Source: Hemiscyllium ocellatum (Eukaryota). From it: DNA of 64,000 nucleotides. Within the stretch, counting starts at the first letter, position 1. Each line of letters opens with the position of its first letter. Below the pieces are notes generated by a model. The model did no database searches. It saw only the letters and a list, made by a program, of their open reading frames with translations, and was not told where the DNA came from. The position numbers were made by a program, and so were the translations under genes. This document shows, one piece after another, positions 1 through 64,000 of the stretch. The DNA lies in contig NW_026867441.1 of the NCBI RefSeq assembly GCF_020745735.1, positions 1 through 64,000 of the forward strand. Direction: 5' to 3'.

Positions 1-1500
1 CCCCATGTGTTTTGAAGGAGATTGTTGAGGAGATTGTGGAGGCATTGGTGATGATCTTTCAGGAATCAATGGAGTCAGGGTGGTTTGGAGGTGGGGTGGG
101 GGATGGGGATATGGTGGGGCAAGGGACAGGAAAATGGCTCACATACCACCCCTGTTTAAGAATGGAGGGAGGTAGAAGATGGGACATTATAGGCCAGTTA
201 GCCTGGACTATTGTTGGTAAGGTTTTAGACTTCAATTTAAGGATAAAATTGCAGCGGACTTGGAAGTGCAATGAGAAAATAGGGCTGAGTCAACACGGCT
301 TCATCAAGGGGAGGTCCTGCCTGGCAAATCTGTTAGAATTTTTGAGGAGGCAATGAGCCAGTCAGACAAAGGAGAGTCCGAGGAAGTAATCTATTTGGAT
401 TTCCAGAAGGCATTTGACATAAGATAAGCGCCCACAGTGATCGGGCAATGTACTGGCATGGACTGAGGACTGGCAGGTAGGCATAAAGCAGACCGTGAGG
501 AACAATGGCCGCTGGTGACGAGTAGAGTTCTGCAGGTGTCAATGTTGGGACCATCACTATTCACGTTATACATGAACAATCTGGATGAAGGAAGTGAAGA
601 CATTGTTGCTACGTTTGCAGACAACATGAGATAGGTGGAGGGACAGGTAGTGTTGAGGAAGTGGGAAGGCTGTAAAAGATCCTGGATAGGCTCGGAGAGT
701 GGGCAAAGAAGTGGCAGATAGAATGCAATGTGTGACAGTGTGAGGGTGTGCACTTCGGTAGGAAGAAGAAATACAAAGACTGTTTGTTAAATGAGGAAAG
801 CCTTTGGAAATCTAAAGCACAAACCTCTTTCAGGGTTCTCTGAAGGTTAACAGGCAGGTCCAGTTTGTGCTTGGGAAAGCAAATGAAATATTAGCATTCA
901 TTTCAAAAGGGCCAGAATACAAGAGCAGAGATGTACTGCTGAGGCTGTGTAAGGCTCTAGTCAGACTGCATTTGGAATGTTGTGAACAGATTTGGGTCCC
1001 AAATTCTAAGAAACAATATGCTGGCATTGGAGGAGTTTACAAGAATGATCCTGGGGGTGAAGGGCTTGTCATATGAGGTGTGGTTGAGGACTCTGGGTCT
1101 GTACTCGCTGGAGTTGAGAAGGACGAGGAAGGATCTCATTGAAATTTACAGAATACTGATAGGCCTGGATAGAGTGGATGCAGAGAGGATGTTTCCAAAA
1201 ACAGGAGAGACTCGAGAACCAAGGCACAGCCTCAGAATGAAGGGCCAACCATTTAGAGTTGAGATGAGGAGGAATTTCTTCAGCCAGAGGTTGGCGAATC
1301 TGTGGAACACATTGTTACAGAGGGCAGTGGAGGCCAAGGCACTGAGTGTATTTAAGACAGAGATAATTAGGTTTGTGATTGTTAAGGGGATGGAACGTTC
1401 CTGTGGAGTAGGCAGGAGAATGGGGGTGAGTAGCATATCTGCCAAGATCAAATGGCAGAGCAGATTCAATGGGCTGAATGGCTGATTTCTGCTCCTATTT
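1..1500 (+). mobile_element. Decayed CR1-type LINE ORF2 (RT) and 3' end
   Basis: Peptides QHGFIKGRSCLANLLEF, VRLHLECCEQIW, LYSLELRR, RRNFFSQR; many stops and frameshifts. Confidence 0.88.
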
Positions 1501-1559
1501 CTTAAAGTCTTCTGGAGAGTTTCCCCAAAACCCTGGAACACTGAACCCACTGAACTGTG

Positions 1560-4300
1560 AGCCCTGCTGTAGCTGTTTGTCATCAGAACTTTGCCAAGAG
1601 ATAACCAAAGAGTGGAGAGAATGTGCTTCCATGTGGGAATTTCAGGATACTTTGCAGTTCCTGGAATGCCATGATTACAGGAAGTGTGGTCAGTGACAGC
1701 AGTTGGAACTCTGGATTTTGGAGCTTGAGCAGCAGCTGGTGTCAGTGCGGAGCGTCCGTGAGGCTGAGAACTCCATGGAGAGCACGTTTCTAGATGTGGT
1801 CATATGCAGCTTCAGAGTATGCAGGGAGAGAGGGAATGGGGGAGCAGCAGACAGTCCAAAAGGACCAGGCAGCTAGTGCAGGAATCCCCTGAGTGCATCC
1901 CACTCTCCAACCAGGATTCAGTTCAGAATCCTGATGAGAATGATGGTTAATCTGGGGAGTGCAGCCAGAGCCAAGTTCCTGGCACCACGGGGGGCTCAGC
2001 TGTACAGGGGGGCACAAGAAGACTGGAAGAGTGAGAGGAGAGGAGATTCAAGAGTGAGGGCAATCGATAGGTGTTTCTGCAGCTGCAGATGGGAATCCAG
2101 GATGGTGTGTTGTCTCCCTGGTGACAGAGTGAAGGATGTCACTGAGCGGCTGCAGAGCACCCTGAGGGGAGAGGGGGAACAGGCAGCAGTTGTGGTCCAC
2201 ATCGGTCCCACTGACAGTGGGAGGAAAGGGATGTGGTCCTCCAGTCAGAATTTAGGGAGCTTGGGAGGAAATTAGGAGCAGGAGCTAAAAGGTAGGAATC
2301 TTCAGATTCCTCCCATTATCCCATGCAAGTGAGAAGAGGAACAGGAGGGTAACACAGGTGACTGTGGAGCTGGAGAAAAGGTCCAGGAGGGAGGGCTTTA
2401 GATTTTTGGGACATTGAGAGTGGGTCTGGGGGAGATGGCACCTGGACAGACCTGACAGTGTTGCTCCTGAACAGAGCTGGGACTGAGTTCCTTTGTGGTG
2501 ATTTACTCGTGCTGTTGGAGAGGGTTTAAACTAACTTGGCAGGGCTGTGAGAGCCGGGGGGAATATCAGAGAGGAACACCAAGGTCCACAGAATTCTCAG
2601 TGCAGTCAATAAGTCACCACCCAGTGGGAAGGATGTGAAGGAATACAAATGCAAGGAATTTACAGAAACCTACAAATATGTTAGAGTCGTTATAAATTGG
2701 GGGAAGGGGTCTTTAATTTCTGAATATAGACAGGGGTAGTAGCAATGTAAAGGGCAGAGAGGGGCCAAAGGTGTGAGACTATGTTCAGGTGAATTTTCAG
2801 GTGGCATCGTGGCCAGTGAAAAAGGCTGTCTCAGAGTACATGGGATCTTGACCAACTGGGCCAGTGGGCTGAGGAATGGCAGATGGAGTTTAATTCAGAT
2901 AAATGTGAGTGCTGTATTTTGGTAAGACACAGGAGATGGGTGAGATCCTCAACAAATATTTCAGGTCAGTATTTATTGTGGAGAATGACATGAATGCAAG
3001 GGAATTTGGAAAATATAGCGCTGCTTTCAAAAAGTCCACAATACAAATGAGGAGATGCAAAAGGTCTTTAAACATATAAAGGTACGTAAATCCCTAGGAT
3101 CTGATCAGGTGTATCCCAGAACATTGTGGGAACTAGGGAAGAGATTGCTGGGCCCCTTGCTGAGATATGTTTATCATCGACAACTACAGGTAAGGTGTTG
3201 GAGAACCAGAGAGGTTGGCTACTGTTGTATCATTATTTCAGAATGGCTATAAGGAAAAGCCAGGGAACTATAGACCAGTGAGCATGATGTCAGTGCTGGG
3301 TAAGATGTTGGAGTGGATTCTGAGGGATAGGATTTCCTTCCATTTGGATAATCAATGTGGTTTTGTGCATTGGAAATTGTGTCTCCATTATTTAATTGAG
3401 GAGGTGACAAAGAAGATTGATGAAGGCAGAACAGTAGACAGTGTCTGTATGGACTTCAGTAAAGTATTTGACAAGGTTCCACATGATAGACTGGTTCGTA
3501 AGGTTAGACCACATGGGATCCAGGGGAAGCTAGCCATTTGGGTAAAAACATTAGCTTGAAAATATGAGAGAGGGAGTGGTGGTAAAGGGTTGATTTTCAG
3601 ATTGGAGAGCTGTGAATAGCTGTGTGCCGCAAGGAGTGGTGCTGGGTCCACTGCTTTTGGTCATTTAAATAAATGATTTCACTGTGAATATAGGAGTTAA
3701 CATAAGTTTGTAAATGACATCAAAATTGGTGGGACAGTGGATATTGAAGAAGATTATCTCAGGGTACAGTGGGACCTTGATCAGATGGGGCAATGGGCAG
3801 AGATGTGGCAAATGGAGTTCAGTTTAGATAAATGTGAGCTGTTGCATTCTGGAAAGGCAAACCAGGGCAGGACTTATACAGTTAATGGGAGGGCCCTGTG
3901 GAGTGTTGCTGAACAAATTGACTGAGGGGTGAGGGGTGAGGTGTGAGGGTGAGGTGTGAGGGGTGAAGGTGAAGGTAAGGGTAAGCTGCATTATTCCTTA
4001 AAACTGGATCACAGGGAGACAGGGCGATGAAGAAGGTTTTGGGAACGTTTACCTTTATTGGTCACTGTGTTGAGTATCGGAGTTGGGACATCATGTTGCA
4101 GCTGTACAGGAGATTGGTGAGGCCATTTTGGGAATAATGTGAACAATTCTGATCTTTCTGTGATAGGAAGGATGTTGTTAAACTTTTAAAAGGTGCAGAA
4201 AGAGATTTACAAAGATTTTGCTAGGACTTGAAGGGTTTGAATGATAGGGAGAGGATAAATAAACTGGTGCAATTTTTCCTGCAGCATTGGAGGCTGAGAA
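1560..4300 (+). mobile_element. CR1 ORF1 (esterase-like) and ORF2 fragments
   Basis: MVCCLPGDRVKDV...AAVVVHIG (SGNH-like ORF1); KPGNYRPVS, MDFSKVFDKVPH (RT). Confidence 0.85.
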
Positions 4301-4898
4301 ATTTATAAAATCATGAGGGACATAGATAATGTGACTAATTGAGGAAGCATGTGAATATTTTGGATAGATGACAAATTATATTCCCAAAGGTCATTCCAGG
4401 GATGAGGAACATAAGTTATGAAGTTTGATTGGAGAATTTGGGACTGTCTTCTTTGGAGAAGGCTGGAAGGAGATTTGTTCGAGGAATTCAAAATCAGGAG
4501 GGGCCTGAACAGAATAAATAGGGAGAAAATGTTCCCAATTGAGAAAGGATTGAGACCGAGAGAACACAGATTGAAAGTAATTGGTAAAAGTAACAAAAGA
4601 AGAGGAAAAACATTTTCAGCCAGTGGGTGGTTAAGGTGTGGAATGCACTGCCTGAGAGTGTGGTGGAGGCAGCTTCAACTGAAACATTTTGAAGGGAATG
4701 AGACTGTTATTTGAAAAGGAACAATGTGCAGGGTGACAGGGAGAAGGCAGGAGAATGACCCTCAGTGAATTGCGCATTCAGAGAACCAGTACAGACAGGA
4801 TGGCTGGAATGGCCTCCTTGTGCACTGTAACAATTCTGTGATTGTGTGATTGAGCAGAGTTAAAGCTGGGGGAGGTGGGAGCTCGGTGTCTCACTGTG

Positions 4899-4916
4899 CT
4901 GCTGCTGCTGCTGCTG
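4899..4916 (+). repeat. (CTG)6 microsatellite downstream of J1
   Basis: Direct count. Paralog of the (CAG)14 at 59527. Confidence 0.9.
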
Positions 4917-5290
4917 AGGTCAGTGAGATCAGAGACTGGGACAGGGAGCCAGAGCTCACATCAAACTCTGTCCCGTGTCCGTCACACTGAGACTGGCAGG
5001 AGGCTACTCACTGATTTCACTCCATGCTGCAGGAATGGGACCACAGGCTGCAAATGGACAGAGCTCCTCCACACGGTGAGTAAAACTTACTGACTTATAT
5101 CTTGCTTTTTAAAGGGGGCAATGGACATATAAAAATACAGCTGGACACATTATTAGACACAGTGCTCCTCAATCAACTATTTCATTCACTGCAGCTCCCG
5201 ACTAACACCTTCAACAATTTAGCATTTGTGTTTTAGAAGTTGTGTTTCAGTATTGACAGGGTTAATAACAGAGGATTGAGGTTTACTTAC

Positions 5291-5325
5291 TCAGTCTGAG
5301 CTTGGTTCCTTTACCGAACGTAAGC
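5291..5325 (-). CDS. IGKJ: Ig light chain J segment, unit 1 (LTFGKGTKLRL-S)
   Basis: G CTT ACG TTC GGT AAA GGA ACC AAG CTC AGA CTG A, then GTAAGT donor (5290-5285). FGxG motif. Confidence 0.95.
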
Positions 5326-5364
5326 CACAGTGAGAGCTCCCAGTGCAGAGGCTGTACAAAAACC
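5326..5364 (-). other. J1 23-bp-spacer RSS, consensus heptamer and nonamer
   Basis: Plus strand reads CACAGTG (5326-5332), 23 nt, ACAAAAACC (5356-5364), abutting the J1 coding start. Confidence 0.95.
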
Positions 5365-5769
5365 TCAGCTCTCTGCTTCCCTCTGTGACTTTCAACCTCT
5401 CCCTGTCTCTCCCTCATTTATGTCTTTCTTCCTCTCTCTTTCTCTCATTCTGTTTCTCTCTCTGAGATGTGTCCAGCTGGACTCGCGAAGTCTATTAAAT
5501 TTATTTTTTGATGTTAACTCATGCAGCCATTCTTCACACGTGGCCATGGAGTGGAAGAGGGAAACTTGAAGCCTTCAGTGAATGGTGGACACCACAGGAA
5601 CTGGAGTGTGTAGGGGACAGTGACAATTCTGGCACGGGGTAATTTGTTCAGTTTCATTTGTATATCACTGTGTTGGTATCAGTGACAGAGGTAGGGCTGT
5701 GTCTCTATTATTATTTATAACATATAATTGTGAATGTGTCAGTACAGGAGGTGGTGCTGTGTGTATTGA

Positions 5770-5795
5770 GGTTTTTGTACGGCTCTATCACTGTG
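5770..5795 (-). other. V1 recombination signal sequence with abnormal 10-bp spacer
   Basis: Minus strand: CACAGTG (5795-5789), spacer ATAGAGCCGT (10 nt, 5788-5779), nonamer ACAAAAACC (5778-5770). Confidence 0.93.
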
Positions 5796-6092
5796 AAGAC
5801 CAGCTGCTATACTGCTGACAGTAATAGTCAGCGACATCCTCATTCTGAACGTTGCTGATTGTCAGGGTGAAACTGGTCCCTGATCCACTGCCGGTGAATC
5901 GATCGGAGATTCCTGTGAATCGAGTTGCTGCATTATAGATCAGGAGAGAGGGTTTCTGACCTTCTCTCTGCTGGTACCAAGCAAGGTTGCTGCTGATGCT
6001 TTGACTGGCCGTACAGGTGATGGTTGCGGTCTGGCCCCGTCCCACTGACAGCACCGGGGGAGACTGGGTCATGATGATGGCCCCACTGATAC
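5796..6092 (-). CDS. IGKV: Ig kappa-type (NS4-like) V exon, unit 1, unrearranged, open frame
   Basis: Translation [99 protein letters not shown]. Conserved Cys, Trp and YYC; followed directly by a heptamer. Confidence 0.95.
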
Positions 6093-6277
6093 CTGAGGGG
6101 TCAGAGAGAATCACAGTGAAGTCAGAACTGTCACAGAAAGAGCCTGTCAAATGAGAGATTGTTGGAGACTCTGAGCATTCCTCTGGTTTCAGCATTTTCC
6201 CTTCAATCACAAGTCAGTGGAATTGGAGTGAAATGGAGAGCAGCTAAAGATCAAGGTGGAAGGAGAGAGATTTGTAC

Positions 6278-6326
6278 CTGCGACACAGAATGCCAGGGGC
6301 CAGATCAGCTGGATGTGTGAAATCAT
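6278..6326 (-). CDS. IGKV: Ig kappa-type light chain leader exon, unit 1 (MISHIQLIWPLAFCVA-G)
   Basis: ATG at 6326-6324, 16 hydrophobic codons plus one base, then GT donor (6277-6276). Phase-1 intron 6093-6277 ends in cccctcAG. Identical to the unit 2 leader. Confidence 0.93.
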
Positions 6327-6386
6327 GGTGTGTGCTCCTGTCCCTGTGCCTGGTTCCTGATAAACTCTCCCTTCACTGGGCTCTGC

Positions 6387-6482
6387 TTTATAAAGCTGCA
6401 GCCTGTGAGAGTCTGACTGGGTGTTCCTCAGTATGTAAATGGCATCAGGCAGAGAGAGCCACGTCAGCCCCTCACACTTCCT
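6387..6482 (-). promoter_or_regulatory. V1 promoter: ETS site, CRE-like site, variant octamer, TATA
   Basis: Sense strand: AGGAAGTG (6482-6475), TGACGTGG (6466-6459), ATTTACAT (6440-6433), TTTATAAA (6394-6387), about 60 nt before the ATG. Motif function is inferred. Confidence 0.75.
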
Positions 6483-56323: not shown

Positions 56324-57302
56324 GGTTAGGGTACGGGTTAGGTTACGGGTTAGGGTTTGGGTTTGGTTAGGGTTCGGGTTAGGTTTTGGGTTAGAGTTTG
56401 GGTTAGAGTTGGGGTAGGGGTTGGGGTTGGGGTTGGGGTTGGGGTTTGGGTTTGGGTTTGGGTTGCGGTATAGGTTAGGTTTAGGGTTGGGGTTAGGGTT
56501 AGCGTTTGGGTTTGGGTTCAGGTTAGGGTTTGGGTTCGGGTTTGGGTTTGTGTTAGGGTTCGGGTTTGAGTTAGGTTTTGGGTTAGAGTTTGGGTTATGG
56601 TTGGGGTTGGGGTTGGGGTTTGGGTTTGGGTTAGGGTTAGGGTTAGGGTTACGGTTTAGGTTAGGGTATGGATTAGGGTTCGGGTTCAGGTTCGNNNNNN
56701 NNNNNNNNNNNNNNNNNNNNNNNNNNNNNNNNNNNNNNNNNNNNNNNNNNNNNNNNNNNNNNNNNNNNNNNNNNNNNNNNNNNNNNNNNNNNNNNNNNNN
56801 NNNNNNNNNNNNNNNNNNNNNNNNNNNNNNNNNNNNNNNNNNNNNNNNNNNNNNTGGGTAAGGTTTCAGGTTCAGGTTCGGGTTAGGGTTGGGTTTTGTG
56901 TTAGGGTTAGGGTTAGCGTTTGTGTTCGGGTTAGGATTAGGGTTTGGGTTTGGGTTAGGGTATGGGTTAGGGTTAGGGTTAGGGTTTGGGTTAGGGTATG
57001 GGTTAGGGTATGGGTAAGGTTTCAGGTTCAGGTTCCGGTTAGGGTTGGGTTTTGTGTTAGGGTTAGGGTTAGGGTTTGTGTTCGGGTTAGGATTAGGGTT
57101 TGGGTTTGGGTTAGGGTATGGGTTAGGGTTAGGGTTTGGAATTAGGGTTAGGGTTTGGGTTAGGGTTAGGGTTAGGGTTAGGGTTTGGGTTAGGGTACGG
57201 GTTAGGGTTCGGGTTCAGGTTCAGGTTAGGGTTGGGTTCTGGGTTATGGTTAGTGTTAGGGTTAGTGTTCGCGTTAGGATTAGGGTTTAGGTTTGGGTTT
57301 GG
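56324..57302 (+). repeat. Interstitial degenerate telomeric (TTAGGG)n array
   Basis: TTAGGG with variants TTTGGG, TTCGGG, TTGGGG, TATGGG. G-rich on the plus strand on both sides of the gap. Confidence 0.93.
56695..56854. other. Assembly gap (160 N)
   Basis: Run of n; true size unknown. Confidence 0.99.
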
Positions 57303-57902: not shown

Positions 57903-57998
57903 AGGAAGTGTGAGGGGCTGACGTGGCTCTCTCTGCCTGATGCCATTTACATACTGAGGAACACCCAGTCAGACTCACACAGGCTGCAGCTTTATAAA
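57903..57998 (+). promoter_or_regulatory. V2 promoter: ETS site, CRE-like site, variant octamer, TATA
   Basis: AGGAAGTG 57903-57910, TGACGTGG 57919-57926, ATTTACAT 57945-57952, TTTATAAA 57991-57998. Confidence 0.75.
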
Positions 57999-58058
57999 GC
58001 AGAGCCCAGTGAAGGGAGAGTTTATCAGGAACCAGGCACAGGGACAGGAGCACACACC

Positions 58059-58107
58059 ATGATTTCACACATCCAGCTGATCTGGCCCCTGGCATTCTGT
58101 GTCGCAG
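58059..58107 (+). CDS. IGKV: Ig kappa-type light chain leader exon, unit 2
   Basis: ATG 58059, MISHIQLIWPLAFCVA-G, GT donor 58108, 186-nt intron ending in AG at 58292-58293. Confidence 0.93.
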
Positions 58108-58293
58108 GTACAAATCTCTCTCCTTCCACCTTGAATCTTTAGCTGCTCTCCATTTCACTCCAATTCCACTGACTTGTGATTGAAGGGAAAATGCTGAAAC
58201 CAGAGGAATGCTCAGTGTCTCCAACAATCTCTCATTTGACTGGCTCTTTCTGTGACAGTTCTGACTTCACTGTGTTTCTCTCTGACCCCTCAG

Positions 58294-58592
58294 GTATCAG
58301 TGGGGACATCATGACCCAGTCTCCCCCGGTGCTGTCAGTGGAACTGGGCCAGACCGCAACCATCACCTGTAAATCCAGTCAGAGTGCCAGTGGTGATGTT
58401 GAATGGTTCCAGCAGCGGGAAGGACAGAAACCCTCTCTCCTGATCTACAATGCTGCATCACTATTCACAGGAGTCTCAAACAGATTCACCGGGACAGAAG
58501 TGTCCAGCACACATTTCACCCTGACAATCAGCAACGTTCAGAATGAGGATGTCGCTGATTATTACTGTCAGCAAAGTGAGAGCTTCCCTTGG
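58294..58592 (+). CDS. IGKV: Ig kappa-type V exon, unit 2, unrearranged, open frame
   Basis: [100 protein letters not shown]. Canonical Cys/Trp/Cys and a kappa-like QQxxxxP CDR3 start. Confidence 0.95.
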
Positions 58593-58620
58593 CACAGTGA
58601 TACAGAGCCGTACAAAAACC
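58593..58620 (+). other. V2 12-bp-spacer RSS, consensus
   Basis: CACAGTG 58593-58599, ATACAGAGCCGT (12 nt), ACAAAAACC 58612-58620. V-12/J-23 is the kappa-type configuration. Confidence 0.95.
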
Positions 58621-59107
58621 TCGATACACATAGTCCCACCTCCTCTACTGACACATCCCACAATTATATATATTTAATATATAATAGAGAACATACACAT
58701 GCACCTCCTGTATTGACAAATCCACAGTTAAAGATAAATGAAACTGAACAAATTACCCCATGCAGGGATTGTCACTGTCCACGACACACTCCAGTCCCTG
58801 TAGTGTCCACCGCTCACTGAAGGCCTCAAGTTTCCCTCTTACACTCCATGGCCACATGTGAAGAGCAGCTGCAAGATTTAACATCAAAATATAAAGTTCA
58901 CAAACCTCCTGAACCCAGCTGGACTCAACCCAGAGAGAGAGAGAGAGAGAGAGAGAGTGAGAGAGAGAGAGGGAGAAAGAGAGAGAGAACGAAACAGAAT
59001 GAGAAAAAAACAGAAAAACATGAATGACAAAGAGAAGGTGAGAGTAAGTGAGAGACAGAGAGAGACAGAGAGAGGTTGACAGTGATAAGAGAGAAGCAGA
59101 GAGCTGA

Positions 59108-59146
59108 TGTTTTTGTACAGCCTCTGTACTGGGAGCTCTCACTGTG
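59108..59146 (+). other. J2 23-bp-spacer RSS, one nonamer mismatch
   Basis: TGTTTTTGT 59108-59116 (consensus GGTTTTTGT), 23 nt, CACTGTG 59140-59146. Confidence 0.93.
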
Positions 59147-59181
59147 GCTTACGTTCGGTAAAGGAACCAAACTCCGACTGA
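59147..59181 (+). CDS. IGKJ: Ig light chain J segment, unit 2 (LTFGKGTKLRL-S)
   Basis: G CTT ACG TTC GGT AAA GGA ACC AAA CTC CGA CTG A, then GTAAGT donor 59182-59187. Confidence 0.95.
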
Positions 59182-59526
59182 GTAAGTCAACCCTTTCAAT
59201 ATCAAACTTGCTAAAACACAAATGCTGAATTGTTGAAGGTGTTAGTGGGGAGCTGCAGTGAATGAAATGGTTGATTGAGGAGCACTGTGTTTAACAGGGT
59301 GTCCAGCTGTATTTCTTTAGTTCCATTGCCCCCTTTAAGCAAGACAGAAGTCAGGAAGTTTACTCACCGTGTGGAGGAGCTCTGTCCATTTGCAGCCTGT
59401 GGTCCCATTCCTGCAGCATGGAGTGAAATCAGTGAGTAGCCTCCTGCCAGTCTCAGTGTGACGGACACGGGGCAGAGTTTGATGTGAGCTCTGGCTCCCT
59501 GTCCCAGTCTCTGATCTCACTGACCT

Positions 59527-59568
<42 letters not shown>
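59527..59568 (+). repeat. (CAG)14 microsatellite downstream of J2
   Basis: Direct count. Confidence 0.9.
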
Positions 59569-59570
<2 letters not shown>

Positions 59571-60129
59571 CAGTGAGACACCGAGCTCCCACCTCCACCA
59601 GCTTTAACTCTACTCAATCACACAATCACAAAACTGTTACAGTGCAAAAGGAGACCATTCTGCCCATCCCATCTGTACTGGCTCTCTGAATGAGCAATTG
59701 ACTAAGTGTCATTCTCCTGCCTTCTCCCTGTCACCCTGCACATTGTTCCTTTTCAAATAACAGTCTCATTCCCTTCAGAATGTTTCAATTGAAGCTGCCT
59801 CCACCACACTCTCAGGCAGTGCATTCCACACCTTAACCACTTGCTTCATGAAAATGTTTTTCCTTGTCTCACTTCTGCTTCTTCTACCAATTACTTTCAA
59901 TCTGTGGCTCTCGCTCTCAATCCTTTAATGAGAGGGAACATTTTCTCCCTGTTTACTCTGTCCAGACCCCTCCTGATGTTGAATTCCTCAAACAAATCTC
60001 CTCTCAGCCTTCTCTTCTCCAAGGAAGACAGTCTGAACTTCTCCAATATATTTTCATAACTGACGTTCCTCATCCCTGAGCCTTCCATGGGAATTTTCTG
60101 TCATGCCATCTGCAAAATATTCATATCCT

Positions 60130-63100
60130 TTGTGAAATATATACCTTTTCTATTCCCCATAGTCCCATTTGCCTGCATTTGGCTCATTTCCTATCCCTTT
60201 TCTCTTCCAATGTACCTGTTCAAATGTTTTTAAAATGTTTTAATCATACTCGCCTCTCCGACTTTCTCTGGCAGTTCATTCAATATCACTTTCTGCCAGA
60301 AAGAGGGATACCTCAGGTCCCTTTTGAATCTTTCCTCTTTCACTTTAAACCGCTGCCCGCTAGGTTTGCACTAACCTACCGTGAGGAAAAGACCTTAGCT
60401 AGTCACCTTATCTATGCCCATTATGATTTTATAAATCTCTAAAATGTCACCCTGAAGCTTCTGAGCTTCCAAAGAAAGTAGCCCTGCCTAACCAGTCTCT
60501 CCTTATAACTCAAACCCTCCAGTCTCGGTGACATCCTTGTCATCCTTTTTACACTCTTTCCAGTTGAATGCTATCCTTCCAATAGCAGGTGGATTGGAAA
60601 CGTGGCCGGACCAACATCTTGGGAAGCTGTAATGTCCCAACTCCCATACCCGATGAAGGCAAGTGTACCAAATGCTTTCTTCACCACCCTGTCTACACGT
60701 GACACCAGTTTCAATCCTCTATGTGCGTCCACCCCTTGGTCTCCCTGTTTGACAACACTCCCCATGGCCCCACAATTAACTGTGTTAGCCCTGGCCTGTA
60801 CCAAAATGCAACAGCTTGCTATTATCTCAATGCATAATGTAAATGTACTCTCAAATAGCCTTCTTCACTGACCATGAAACCGCCAATTTTGGTGTCATCT
60901 TCAAACTCACAAACTATACTTCCTATATTCTCATTCAATTTGTTTCTATAAATGACGAACAATGATGAACCCGGAAGCAATCCTTTCGCTTGTCACAGGC
61001 TTCCAGTCTGAACAGCAACCCTCTACCACCACACTCTGTCTCCAACCATCAAGCCAATTTTGTATTAATTAACTTGCTCTTCCTGGATCACATTTGATCT
61101 AACCTTACTAACCAGATGTCCATGCAGGAAATTATCAAAGGCCTTGCTAAAGTCCATGTAGACAATGTCTACCACTCTGCCCTCAGCTATCTTATTGGTC
61201 ATGTCCTCAAAAAAATTTGTAAGACACATTTTCCCACTGACAAAGCCATGTGGACTATCCCTAATCAATCCTTGTCTTTCCAAATGCATATAGATCCTGT
61301 CTATCAAATTCCCCTCCAACAATTTACCACGATCAGACTCACTGGTCTATAATTCCCTGTGTATTCCTTGCAGATCTCATTAAATAACAGCTCAACATTA
61401 GACACACCCCCGTCTTCCAGCACATCACCCGTGGCTGTTGATGATACAAACATCTCCACAAGGGGCATCACTGTCTCTTCCCAAGCTTCCCACAAAGTAT
61501 TGGGATGGAGCTGATCAGGTCCTGGGAATTTATCTATCTTTATGAGTTTAAAGAGCAGATTACCGCACGTCTTCTTCTGTAATATGGGCTCTTCTCAAGA
61601 CATCAACATTTATTTCCCAAATTTCCTTCACTTCCATGTCCTTCTCAACTGTAAATACTGAAGCAAAATATTATATTTGTAACTCATTCATACTCTGTTT
61701 TAAAATAAAATGTGAAAAATTCTAAGAGTGAAACATTGGAGGTGATCCATGGGATACGATCCATGATCATGGCTTTATGCTGGATTGTCCGTTGTCCTTT
61801 TCCATTGTTCCCCTAAACTTTATGATACAATGATCACTCTTCCCTAAATGTCCTCTCACTGACACTTGATCTACTTGGATTTCCTCATTCCCAAGATCTA
61901 GTTGCTGTCTCAGTTGATATTCTGACAATTAAAATCCTGTAATGTTTGCACCTCTCTGTAAATTCCTTGCAGGTTTGCTCCTCTACATCCTTCCCACTAG
62001 TCAGTGACCTACAGACTGCACTGAACAACCTGATTGCACCTTTTTGTTCCTTATCTTGAACCAAATCGATTCTGTCCTTGACCCCTTTGAGACACCTTCT
62101 TTCTCCAGCTCTGCACCGATCTCCTTAATCAATCCCACACCTCTCACCCTTTCCCCCCTTTCCTATCTTTCCTGAACACTTTGTATCCAGGAATATTTAA
62201 CACCCAGTCCTGTCTTCATTTGAACCTCATCTGTTAGAGCAACAACATCAGATTTCCACTTGGTAATCTGTGTCTGTAATTCCCCAGTCTTATTCCCCAC
62301 ACTCTGTGCAGTCCCATACATGCACAGCCAGCCAGATTTAGAATTTATTGCTGGCTCTCTCTCACTCTGACCCTGCCTAGGAAGTTACTACTCCTTACTC
62401 TGATGCGAACAATTTTTTCCAGGGTTCTGTGTTCCTTGGTGTTCCTTCCTGATATTACCCTCCTGGTTCCCACGGCCCTTCAATATTAATTTAAACCCTC
62501 TCCAACAGCACCAGCAAATCACCCCACGAGGAGCTCAATTCCTGCTATGTTCAGGAGCAACCCATCCAGTCTATAGAGGTTGCATCTCCCACCAGGTCAT
62601 TCCCAAAGACCCAAGAATCTAAAGCCCTCCCTCCTGGACCACATTTCCAGCCCACATCCACCTGTCTTATCTTCCTGTTCCTATCCTCACTTGCATTGGT
62701 CATGGGAGTAATCCAAAGATTCCTATTTTTGAGTTCCTGTTGCGAATTGCCTCCCAAGCTCCCTAAATTCTGACTGCAGGAGCACATCCTTTTTCTCCCT
62801 CTGTCACTGGGACCGATGTGGACCATGACTGCTGCCTGTTCCCCCTCTCCCCTCAGGGTGCTCTGCAGCCACTCAGTGACATCCTTGACCCTGGCACCAG
62901 GGAGACAACACACCATCCTGGATTCCCATCTGCAGCTGCAGAAAATCTTATCGATTGCCCTCACTCTCGAATCTCCTCTCACTATCGCTCTTCCAGTTCC
63001 TTGTGCCCCCCCTGTACAGCTTCCCCCCATCTTGGTGCATTGGCTGCATTCCCCAGATGAACCATCATTCTCATCGGGATTCTGAACTGAATTTTTGTTG

Positions 63101-63440
63101 GAGAGCGGGATGCACTCAGGGTATTCCTGTACTAGCTGCCTGGTCCTTTTGGACTGTCTGCTGCTTCCCCATTCCCTCTCTCCCTGCATACTCTGAAGCT
63201 GCAGAGTGACCACATCTAGAAACGTGCTCTCCACGGAGCTCTCAGCCTCACGGACGCTCCACACTGACACCAGCTGCTGCTCAAGCTCCGAAGCCCAGAG
63301 CTCCAACTGCTGTCACTGACCACACTTCCTGCTCACATTGTATTCCAGGAGCAGCTCGGAAGCATTCTGAAGTTCCCACAAGGAACAGGATGCATACTGT
63401 CTCCACTCTTTGGTTATCTCTTGGCAAAGTTCTAATGACA
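60130..63440 (-). mobile_element. CR1 ORF2 and ORF1 fragments downstream of J2
   Basis: GNYRPVSL, MDFSKAFD, MVCCLPGARVKDV on the minus strand. Confidence 0.82.
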
Positions 63441-64000
63441 AACAGCTCCAGCAGGGCTCACAATCCAGAGCTTTCAGTTTTCTGGGGTTTTGCAGAGTCT
63501 CTTCAAAAGATATCAGAATTAGGCCATTCGCCCCATCAAGTCTGCTGTGCTGTTTGGTCATGTGTTTCTCAAGACTATTCTCCTGCCTTCTTCCCATTAT
63601 GCTTGTTCGCCTTTCCAATCAGGAATCTATCAATGTCTGTCCTAAATACACTCAATGACTTCATCTCCACTGCAATGAGTTCCACAGATTAACCACCCTC
63701 TGGCAGAAGAAATTCCTTCGCATCTCAGTCCTAATGAGTTATCCCTAAATTCTGTGGCTGTGCCCTCTGGTCCTTGTTTCACTTACTGGTGGAAACATCT
63801 TCTCCACGTCCCTATCCAGACCTCTCAGTGTTGTGTAAGTGTATATGTGATCCTCCCATGTCCTTCTGAACTCCATCAAGTACACATCCAGAGTTCTCAA
63901 CCGCTCTCATCAGACCAGGCTGTCACCCCCAGGGTCATTCTTATAAACCTCCTCTGGATCTCCTCTAATACAAGCACATCCCTCCTTATATATGGGTCCC

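What the first reader, a model, noticed from the sequence alone, without database searches (positions are those of the whole stretch)
5770..5795. V1 RSS has a 10-bp spacer (2-bp deletion) on an otherwise intact V gene
Seen: spacer ATAGAGCCGT versus V2's ATACAGAGCCGT, a 2-nt loss in the ATACAG stretch. Heptamer, nonamer, ORF, splice sites and promoter are all intact. Established: RAG tolerates 12+/-1 with reduced efficiency, and larger deviations strongly impair recombination. Inference: V1 is recombination-crippled, which leaves J1's fully consensus 23-RSS and its C available to V2 by inversion. Alternatively V1 is a young pseudogene or conversion donor, or shark RAG is more tolerant of spacer length.
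Basis: partly seen in the sequence, partly recalled or inferred. Interest (0 to 1): 0.7.

Follow-up and report, generated by a model that had tools for sequence, protein, structure and literature searches.

The report
Shark kappa V with shortened RSS
One shark antibody light-chain V gene has lost two bases from the spacer of its "cut here" recombination signal, which probably makes an otherwise intact gene nearly unable to join its J segment; this is an ordinary young defect in a large gene family, not a new mechanism.

Summary
V1 (minus strand, V exon 5796-6092) ends in a perfect heptamer and nonamer separated by 10 bp (ATAGAGCCGT). Paralog V2 (plus strand, RSS 58593-58620) has the same RSS with 12 bp (ATACAGAGCCGT).

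V1's leader, splice sites, reading frame, conserved Cys/Trp/Cys and octamer/TATA promoter are intact. Its J1, 405 bp downstream, has a perfect 23-RSS.

Ten kappa V genes fetched from the bamboo shark Chiloscyllium punctatum have spacers of 12 bp (nine) or 13 bp (one, with a degenerate nonamer). Seven J signals there are all 23 bp. One bamboo-shark V of V1's own subfamily carries exactly V2's 12-bp spacer. The 10-bp spacer is therefore a derived 2-bp deletion, and spacer length is conserved in these sharks.

The literature says length changes of more than 1 nt severely reduce joining. The best reading is a young, recombination-impaired "ORF-class" V gene.

It has no supporting evidence, and published shark data argue against it. 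No C exon lies in the window.

I could not check reads or expression. Unchecked earlier notes of this scan report several other RSS-damaged kappa clusters in this genome, including another 10-bp V. Interest is low.

The parts
6433..6440 (-). Octamer-like promoter element ATTTACAT of V1 (one mismatch to ATTTGCAT)
   Evidence: The same 15-mer is present upstream of V2 (57940-57954) and in 5 of the bamboo-shark loci.
6387..6394 (-). TATA-like element TTTATAAA of V1
   Evidence: It lies in the 153-bp promoter/5'UTR block that is 99.3% identical to V2's.
6278..6326 (-). V1 leader exon (MISHIQLIWPLAFCVA + first base of the Gly codon)
   Evidence: It is 49/49 identical to the V2 leader and matches the leader of the nurse shark NS4 cDNA P0103.
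6093..6277 (-). V1 leader intron (GT...AG)
   Evidence: It is 98.4% identical to V2's and 91-98% identical to bamboo-shark paralogs.
5796..6092 (-). V1 V exon, open frame, kappa-type V domain (CDR1 [11 protein letters not shown], germline CDR3 QQYSSWS)
   Evidence: Pfam V-set E=1.5e-16. It is 83-85% identical to the nurse shark NS4/kappa cDNA P0103 (83% in alignment A2; 85% by BLASTP), and 96% identical over the aligned 70% of the query to the H. ocellatum model P0122.
5789..5795 (-). V1 RSS heptamer CACAGTG (consensus)
5779..5788 (-). V1 RSS spacer ATAGAGCCGT, 10 nt, where relatives have 12
   Evidence: compared
5770..5778 (-). V1 RSS nonamer ACAAAAACC (consensus)
5365..5769 (-). V1-J1 intervening DNA (405 bp), ending in a purine-rich GA-type tract
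   Evidence: It is 79% identical to the V2-J2 interval.
5326..5364 (-). J1 23-RSS; read outward from the J1 coding end (plus strand) it is a perfect heptamer, 23-nt spacer and perfect nonamer
5291..5325 (-). J1 coding segment (..TFGKGTKLRL) followed by splice donor GTAAGT
   Evidence: It differs from J2 at 2 positions.
58059..58592 (+). V2 gene: leader exon 58059-58107, intron, V exon 58294-58592
   Evidence: Pfam V-set E=5.7e-18.
58593..58620 (+). V2 12-RSS, consensus heptamer and nonamer, spacer ATACAGAGCCGT
59108..59181 (+). J2 23-RSS (nonamer has one mismatch at its last position) and J2 coding segment (59147-59181)

Best explanation
The window holds two divergently oriented cartilaginous-fish Ig kappa (type III / NS4) mini-loci: C1<-J1<-V1 on the left and V2->J2->C2 on the right, about 52 kb apart. 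It probably comes from the epaulette shark or a close relative. V1 has suffered a recent germline 2-bp deletion (CA or AC) inside the 12-RSS spacer, leaving 10 bp. The heptamer and nonamer are untouched, so RAG can still bind each motif. The two motifs now sit about 7 Angstrom closer and are rotated by roughly 70 degrees relative to each other. The RAG1 nonamer-binding domain and the active site at the heptamer therefore cannot engage both motifs in the 12-RSS geometry needed for synapsis with J1's 23-RSS. V1-J1 joining is expected to fall by one to two orders of magnitude. V1 then behaves as an IMGT 'ORF-class' gene: transcribable and translatable, but rarely or never contributing to the repertoire. 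Everything else is intact because the lesion is young, not because the gene is selected in this state. Shown here: the anatomy, the derived nature of the deletion, and the conservation of 12/23 spacing in relatives. Inferred: the size of the recombination defect, its consequences, and that the deletion is real in the animal.
For: The 10-nt spacer with perfect motifs sits next to the V1 coding end. The V2 RSS is identical apart from a 2-nt gap. Ten C. punctatum kappa V signals have 12 nt (nine) or 13 nt (one, with a degenerate nonamer), and seven J signals all have 23 nt. L007 belongs to V1's FR3 subfamily and has exactly ATACAGAGCCGT, which is the presumed ancestral state. Framework dS between V1 and its bamboo-shark subfamily is 0.08-0.11, against 0.28 between V1 and V2, so the subfamilies predate the genus split and the deletion postdates it. 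The H. ocellatum gene model P0122 is 96% identical to V1 over the aligned region. It reads through its RSS as ..[10 protein letters not shown].., the translation frame of a 12-nt spacer (compare V2's read-through [10 protein letters not shown]). V1's coding region, splice sites and promoter are intact. [quoted passage not shown] Unchecked scan notes list other RSS lesions in kappa clusters of this genome.
Against: I had no access to reads or to other individuals, so an assembly error or a private allele is not excluded. No repertoire data for this species were found, so V1 usage is unknown. The size of the effect comes from mouse substrates, not shark RAG. The two signals are only 405 bp apart in cis and have perfect motifs, which could rescue some joining. 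An unchecked scan note reports a second kappa V with a 10-bp spacer elsewhere in this genome. If that is an independent event, it would hint that the state is tolerated.
Confidence: 0.6

Rival explanations
1. The 10-bp spacer is not a fixed feature of the animal. It is either a consensus or assembly error, or a rare allele of this haplotype, and the gene normally has 12 bp and is fully functional.
For: No read-level check was possible. The exact V1 product is not in the protein collection, and H. ocellatum DNA could not be fetched. The only metagenome hit for the pattern was an unrelated teleost-like V.
Against: The deleted dinucleotide lies in non-repetitive sequence (ATACAGAG), not in a homopolymer or microsatellite where consensus errors concentrate. 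The surrounding 1.3 kb aligns cleanly to V2. The only gap in the window is 50 kb away.
Confidence: 0.15
2. The 10-bp spacer is tolerated. With perfect heptamer and nonamer and a partner only 405 bp away, shark RAG still joins V1 to J1 at a useful, perhaps deliberately lowered, rate.
For: Both conserved motifs are perfect. J1 is intact with a perfect 23-RSS. V1's coding sequence is closer to the family consensus than V2's. An unchecked note reports another 10-bp kappa V in this genome.
Against: Spacer length is strictly kept at 12 (once 13) and 23 in 10 V and 7 J signals of a related shark and in V2, J1 and J2 here. That argues for the same length constraint as in mammals. The literature reports a severe drop for changes of more than 1 nt. 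No alternative heptamer or nonamer register gives a 12-nt spacer: shifting the nonamer by 2 gives AAAAACCTC, with 4 mismatches including positions 6-7, read directly.
Confidence: 0.15
3. One reading: because V1 is crippled, J1's consensus 23-RSS and C1 are used by V2 through a 53-kb inversional inter-cluster rearrangement.
For: The geometry is right. The V2 12-RSS (58593-58620) and the J1 23-RSS (5326-5364) point the same way, so joining would invert 5326-58592 and place V2 with its promoter upstream of J1. Inter-cluster inversional IgL joins exist in zebrafish (PMC3014032).
Against: V2 has its own J2 487 bp downstream with a near-consensus 23-RSS. Reviews state that all available shark data show rearrangement within clusters only, not between them (PMC5192425; PMC3014032). 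C1 is outside the window. No transcript or junction evidence exists.
Confidence: 0.04
4. V1 is retained as a sequence donor (germline gene conversion or unequal exchange) for neighbouring kappa clusters rather than as a rearranging gene.
For: Promoter, leader and leader intron are 98-100% identical between the two clusters, while the V-J interval is 79% identical. This pattern is compatible with homogenisation.
Against: The same 5' block is 91-98% conserved across species and across all paralogs, so family-wide constraint or concerted evolution explains it without a special role for V1. The CDRs of V1 and V2 are very different (55-81% identity). No somatic conversion is known for shark light chains (my own knowledge).
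Confidence: 0.05

Closest known systems
Cartilaginous-fish Ig kappa (type III / NS4) V-J-C clusters (nurse shark NS4 family; Lee et al. 2000, PMC2193156)
   Same: One V, one J about 0.4-0.5 kb downstream in the same orientation. The V carries a 12-type RSS and the J a 23-RSS. The octamer promoter and split leader are present. V1 is 83-85% identical to the nurse shark NS4 cDNA P0103. The family is large and includes pseudogenes with non-canonical RSS.
   Different: Here the lesion is a spacer-length change with perfect heptamer and nonamer and an intact coding region. The published nurse shark pseudogene S5 has stop codons, a splice defect and non-canonical heptamers.
IMGT 'ORF' functionality class of germline V genes (open reading frame but defective RSS, splice or regulatory element)
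   Same: Open frame, conserved Cys23/Trp41/Cys104 and intact splice sites. The only defect is an RSS spacer outside 12+/-1.
   Different: The class is a bookkeeping category defined mainly on mammals. No usage data exist for this shark gene.
Spacer-length mutants of the 12-RSS in extrachromosomal recombination substrates (Hesse et al. 1989; Akamatsu et al. 1994, as summarised in PMC2212273)
   Same: Consensus heptamer and nonamer with the spacer shortened by more than 1 nt.
   Different: Those are engineered substrates tested with mouse recombinase in cell lines. This is a natural chromosomal gene in a shark and is untested.
Zebrafish inter-cluster inversional IgL rearrangement (Zimmerman et al. 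2008, PMC3014032)
   Same: Neighbouring V-J-C clusters in opposite polarity on one chromosome, so a V of one cluster could reach the J of the other by inversion.
   Different: In zebrafish this was shown with cDNA clones. In sharks it has not been observed, the clusters are much further apart, and nothing here shows it.

Membership tests
Cartilaginous-fish Ig kappa (type III/NS4) cluster | V-set domain with closest similarity to shark kappa/NS4 V regions | tested here: met
   Pfam V-set E=1.5e-16. Best hits are C. punctatum and H. ocellatum kappa-like proteins and the nurse shark NS4 cDNA P0103, at 83-96% identity.
Cartilaginous-fish Ig kappa (type III/NS4) cluster | Single V followed within about 0.5 kb by a single J in the same orientation, with the J carrying a 23-RSS | tested here: met
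   V1 ends at 5796 and J1 starts at 5325. The J1 RSS is a perfect 23-type. Cluster 2 and seven bamboo-shark loci have the same layout.
Cartilaginous-fish Ig kappa (type III/NS4) cluster | Constant (C1-set) exon downstream of J | tested here: inconclusive
   No Ig C-like open frame lies in 1-5290 (minus strand) or 59182-64000 (plus strand). Both C exons must lie beyond the window ends, more than 5.2 kb and more than 4.8 kb from the J segments.
Functional (IMGT 'F') germline V gene | Open reading frame, initiation codon, leader splice sites, Cys23/Trp41/Cys104 | tested here: met
Functional (IMGT 'F') germline V gene | Canonical RSS: heptamer, nonamer and a spacer of 12+/-1 nt | tested here: not met
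   The spacer is 10 nt. The IMGT definition is 12+/-1 (PMC7555362).
IMGT 'ORF'-class V gene | Open frame with a defect confined to the RSS, splice or regulatory elements | tested here: met
   The only departure found is the spacer length.
IMGT 'ORF'-class V gene | Not found, or only rarely found, rearranged and expressed | not testable with these tools
   No repertoire or transcript data for this species are in the collections searched.
Inter-cluster inversional IgL rearrangement (zebrafish type) | V of one cluster and J of another in opposite transcriptional polarity with complementary 12/23 signals | tested here: met
   V2 (+) carries a 12-RSS and J1 (-) a 23-RSS. The signals point the same way, 53 kb apart.
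Inter-cluster inversional IgL rearrangement (zebrafish type) | Rearranged transcripts or junctions joining V of one cluster to J-C of another | not testable with these tools
   No data. The literature reports only intra-cluster joining in sharks.

The most novel reading that the evidence does not exclude
Ten-bp-spacer kappa V signals with perfect heptamer and nonamer are a recurrent, retained state in this shark. This one and a second reported by the scan on another piece of the genome would be examples. They would act as deliberately weak signals that delay or gate a cluster's rearrangement, or that free its J-C for use by a neighbouring, oppositely oriented V through inversion. That would be the first RAG-mediated inter-cluster light-chain joining in a cartilaginous fish.
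Probability: 0.05. Interest if true: 0.6.

Novelty: new member of a known kind. Interest (0 to 1): 0.15.

Why it matters
As it stands, this is a useful annotation. V1 in this cluster should be labelled ORF or recombination-impaired rather than functional when shark kappa repertoires or germline databases are built. It adds to the picture that many kappa mini-loci in this genome carry signal lesions, which fits birth-and-death evolution of a multi-cluster family. It would matter more only if V1-J1 joins turned out to be common, meaning shark RAG tolerates a 10-bp spacer, or if V2-J1 inversion products existed. Both would change textbook statements, and both are cheap to test by PCR on lymphoid DNA.

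Tried and rejected
1. Independent DNA for the same gene. The exact V1 product is absent from the protein collection. The H. ocellatum and S. torazame records could not be fetched because their files are too large. No read-level or second-assembly check was therefore possible.

2. Metagenome scan for the V1/V2 RSS with 10-12 nt spacers. The only hit, L009, is a teleost-like light-chain V with a 12-nt spacer (ATAGAGAGCCGT). It says nothing about V1.

3. Alternative registers. No CAC lies 2 nt upstream of the heptamer. Shifting the nonamer by 1 or 2 nt gives 4 mismatches each (read). A hidden 12-nt RSS is rejected.

4. Germline open-and-shut joint by RAG. V1's coding end is also 2 nt shorter than V2's, directly next to the intact heptamer. 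An open-and-shut event could trim that end. However, germline CDR3 length varies among all relatives, and such an event cannot remove bases from inside the spacer. Rejected as an explanation for the spacer.

5. Dating from conservation of heptamer and nonamer against V2. The neutral divergence between the clusters (about 21% in the V-J interval) predicts only about 1.7 changes in 16 positions on the V1 lineage. Perfect motifs are therefore not significant evidence of selection (my estimate, P about 0.17).

6. Framework dN/dS of V1 against relatives (0.3-0.7). Pairwise values across paralogs cannot isolate the V1 terminal branch, so this is uninformative about relaxed constraint.

7. Hesse et al. 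1989 could not be read. Exact percentages for a 10-bp spacer are therefore not quoted.

8. The search of earlier findings by sequence returned nothing.

Full report
**What is there**

The window contains two immunoglobulin light-chain mini-loci of the cartilaginous-fish kappa (type III / NS4) kind, in divergent orientation.

Cluster 1 is on the minus strand:
- octamer-like ATTTACAT at 6440-6433
- TATA-like element at 6394-6387
- leader exon 6326-6278
- GT..AG leader intron 6277-6093
- V exon 6092-5796
- RSS 5795-5770
- 405 bp of intervening DNA
- a 23-RSS at 5364-5326
- J1 at 5325-5291, followed by GTAAGT

Cluster 2 is on the plus strand:
- leader 58059-58107
- V exon 58294-58592
- 12-RSS 58593-58620
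- 487 bp of intervening DNA
- 23-RSS 59108-59146
- J2 59147-59181

Neither constant exon is inside the window. No Ig C-like open frame exists left of J1 or right of J2. Those stretches instead hold retroelement debris, including a reverse-transcriptase fragment at 3215-3556.

The best protein matches are kappa-like proteins of Hemiscyllium ocellatum (96% over the aligned part, and 87%), of Chiloscyllium punctatum (74-86%), and the nurse shark NS4 cDNA (83-85%). The genome is therefore probably the epaulette shark or a near relative.

**The observation**

It is correct as written. The V1 signal is CACAGTG, then ATAGAGCCGT (10 nt), then ACAAAAACC. The V2 signal is CACAGTG, then ATACAGAGCCGT (12 nt), then ACAAAAACC.

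A search for perfect heptamer and nonamer at any spacing of 8-26 nt finds only V1, V2 and J1 in 64 kb, against 0.00 expected. In the cluster-to-cluster alignment all 26 shared RSS positions are identical, and the only difference is a 2-column gap.

V1 is otherwise intact:
- The frame is open and Cys23, Trp and YYC are present.
- Its FR3 has the family-typical [10 protein letters not shown] motif.
- Pfam V-set gives E=1.5e-16.
- The splice sites are canonical.
- The promoter block is 152/153 identical to V2's and the leader is 49/49 identical.
- The octamer-containing 15-mer is shared with V2 and five bamboo-shark loci.

**Is 10 nt unusual for these genes?**

I fetched ten kappa clusters of C. 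punctatum through their annotated V proteins and scanned them.
- V spacers are 12 nt in nine loci. In the tenth the spacer is 13 nt, and that locus also has a degenerate nonamer.
- The seven J signals recovered are all 23 nt.
- The V spacer sequence itself is conserved (ATACAGAGCCAT, ATACACAGCTGT and similar).
- Locus L007 carries exactly ATACAGAGCCGT, the V2 spacer.

FR3 identity and framework dS place V1 with L001, L002, L003 and L007 (dS 0.08-0.11). They place V2 with L004-L006, and dS between V1 and V2 is 0.28. The two subfamilies are therefore older than the Hemiscyllium/Chiloscyllium split, and both ancestrally had 12 nt. V1's 10 nt is a derived loss of CA (or AC) from ATA[CA]GAG.

A further hint comes from the H. 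ocellatum gene model P0122, the closest relative of V1 found. It runs through its RSS and translates as ..[10 protein letters not shown].. This is the 12-nt frame seen when V2 is read through ([10 protein letters not shown]). It also implies a T at heptamer position 1 and a 5'-truncated V, so that sister cluster looks damaged in a different way. This inference rests on protein sequence only, because the DNA could not be fetched.

**What it most likely does**

Established knowledge applies here. [quoted passage not shown] IMGT defines signals as 12+/-1 and 23+/-1 and classes germline genes as F, ORF or P (PMC7555362).

Two base pairs fewer brings the nonamer about 7 Angstrom closer to the heptamer and turns it by about 70 degrees. 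This is B-DNA geometry and is my inference. The motifs therefore cannot both be held in the 12-RSS configuration required for pairing with a 23-RSS.

No alternative register rescues a 12-nt spacer (read). I therefore read V1 as a recombination-impaired, ORF-class gene. It should still give germline transcripts from an intact promoter but should rarely join J1.

The intactness of everything else is what a young lesion predicts. Even against the much more distant V2, neutral divergence (21% in the V-J interval) would predict fewer than two changes in the 16 motif positions on the V1 lineage.

Nurse shark NS4 has about 50 genes, with pseudogenes that include non-canonical RSS (PMC2193156). Unchecked notes of this scan list more kappa signal lesions in this same genome:
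- a V without an RSS
- a J with a 12-type signal
- a J lacking its heptamer
- a J with a 9-bp spacer
- another V with a 10-bp spacer

I did not verify these. If right, they fit birth-and-death decay of individual mini-loci.

The geometry is right. The V2 signal and the J1 signal point the same way, so a V2-J1 join would invert 5326-58592 and put V2 with its promoter in front of J1.

Against the idea:
- V2 has its own J2 487 bp away, whose only blemish is the last nonamer base.
- The distance to J1 is 53 kb.
- C1 is not visible in the window.
- Reviews state that RAG-mediated joining in sharks has been seen only within clusters (PMC5192425; PMC3014032). Inter-cluster inversion is documented only for zebrafish IgL.

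I rate this at a few percent.

The alternative that shark RAG tolerates other spacer lengths is disfavoured by the strict length conservation in the comparators. It is not excluded.

**Limits**

I could not reach raw reads, other individuals or any repertoire data. The exact V1 product is not in the protein collection. The one metagenome hit to the RSS pattern is a teleost-like V. An assembly error is unlikely, because the deleted dinucleotide is not in a repeat, but it remains possible. The size of the defect is extrapolated from mouse substrates.

**Verdict**

The 'V2 takes J1 by inversion' part is unsupported. This is a new example of a well-known kind of defect, and interest is low.

Noticed in passing
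window 6093-6480 (-) and 57905-58293 (+); loci L001-L008: The promoter, leader and 185-bp leader intron are 98-100% identical between the two clusters and 91-98% identical to bamboo-shark paralogs. The V-J intervening DNA is only about 79-84% identical. The leader intron is better conserved than the framework regions, which suggests a regulatory element or strong concerted evolution in this 5' block.
   Followed up: partly
window 58470-58568 (+): V2 belongs to a distinct kappa V subfamily, with a one-codon insertion and an unusual FR3 ([14 protein letters not shown] instead of [13 protein letters not shown]) and one residue fewer in FR1. The same FR3 type occurs in C. punctatum L004-L006, so it is an old subfamily and not damage.
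   Followed up: partly
window 5796-5800 (-): V1's germline coding end is also 2 nt shorter than V2's, directly next to the intact heptamer (..TCTT|CACAGTG versus ..CCTTGG|CACAGTG). Two separate 2-nt differences therefore flank the heptamer. Germline CDR3 length varies across relatives, so this is probably ordinary.
   Followed up: partly
window 1-5290 and 59182-64000: Neither constant exon is in the window. The J-C introns exceed 5.2 kb and 4.8 kb and contain retroelement fragments, for example a reverse-transcriptase ORF at 3215-3556 (Pfam RVT_1, E=1.2e-10). A conserved ~70-87 aa ORF ('..RSVRSETGTGSQSSHQTL..') lies just downstream of each J (4875-5093 and 59335-59598, on the strand opposite to the J in each cluster). 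It reflects the duplicated intron sequence.
   Followed up: partly
protein P0122 (H. ocellatum gene model, DNA not fetchable): The closest relative of V1 is annotated as a 214-aa model. It starts inside CDR1, reads through its RSS (..[17 protein letters not shown]..) and then splices to C. This implies a 12-nt spacer, a T at heptamer position 1, and a damaged 5' part of V. It would be a sister cluster with a different RSS lesion.
   Followed up: partly
L009:100-127 (metagenome contig ERZ506946 NODE-2370): A teleost-like Ig light-chain V gene sits in a metagenome contig. It carries a 12-RSS whose spacer ATAGAGAGCCGT differs by one base from the shark kappa spacer ATACAGAGCCGT. This points to deep conservation of the kappa 12-RSS spacer sequence, and to host contamination of that metagenome.
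   Followed up: no
window 56695-56854 and flanks to about 57140: A 160-N assembly gap is embedded in a GT-rich minisatellite that translates as VRVRV.. repeats, about 1 kb upstream of the V2 promoter. I left it as it is.
   Followed up: no
window 5370-5480 (-) and 58925-59100 (+): A purine-rich (GA)n-like tract lies immediately upstream of each J 23-RSS nonamer. It is about 80 bp longer in cluster 2 and accounts for most of the length difference between the two V-J intervals.
   Followed up: no
protein P0127 (C. punctatum chiPu_0011747): This is a 237-aa bamboo-shark kappa model with a contiguous V-J-C reading (..YYCMQDYSVPQTLSFGKGTKLQLN..). It is possibly a germline-joined kappa gene like those described in nurse shark.
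   Followed up: no
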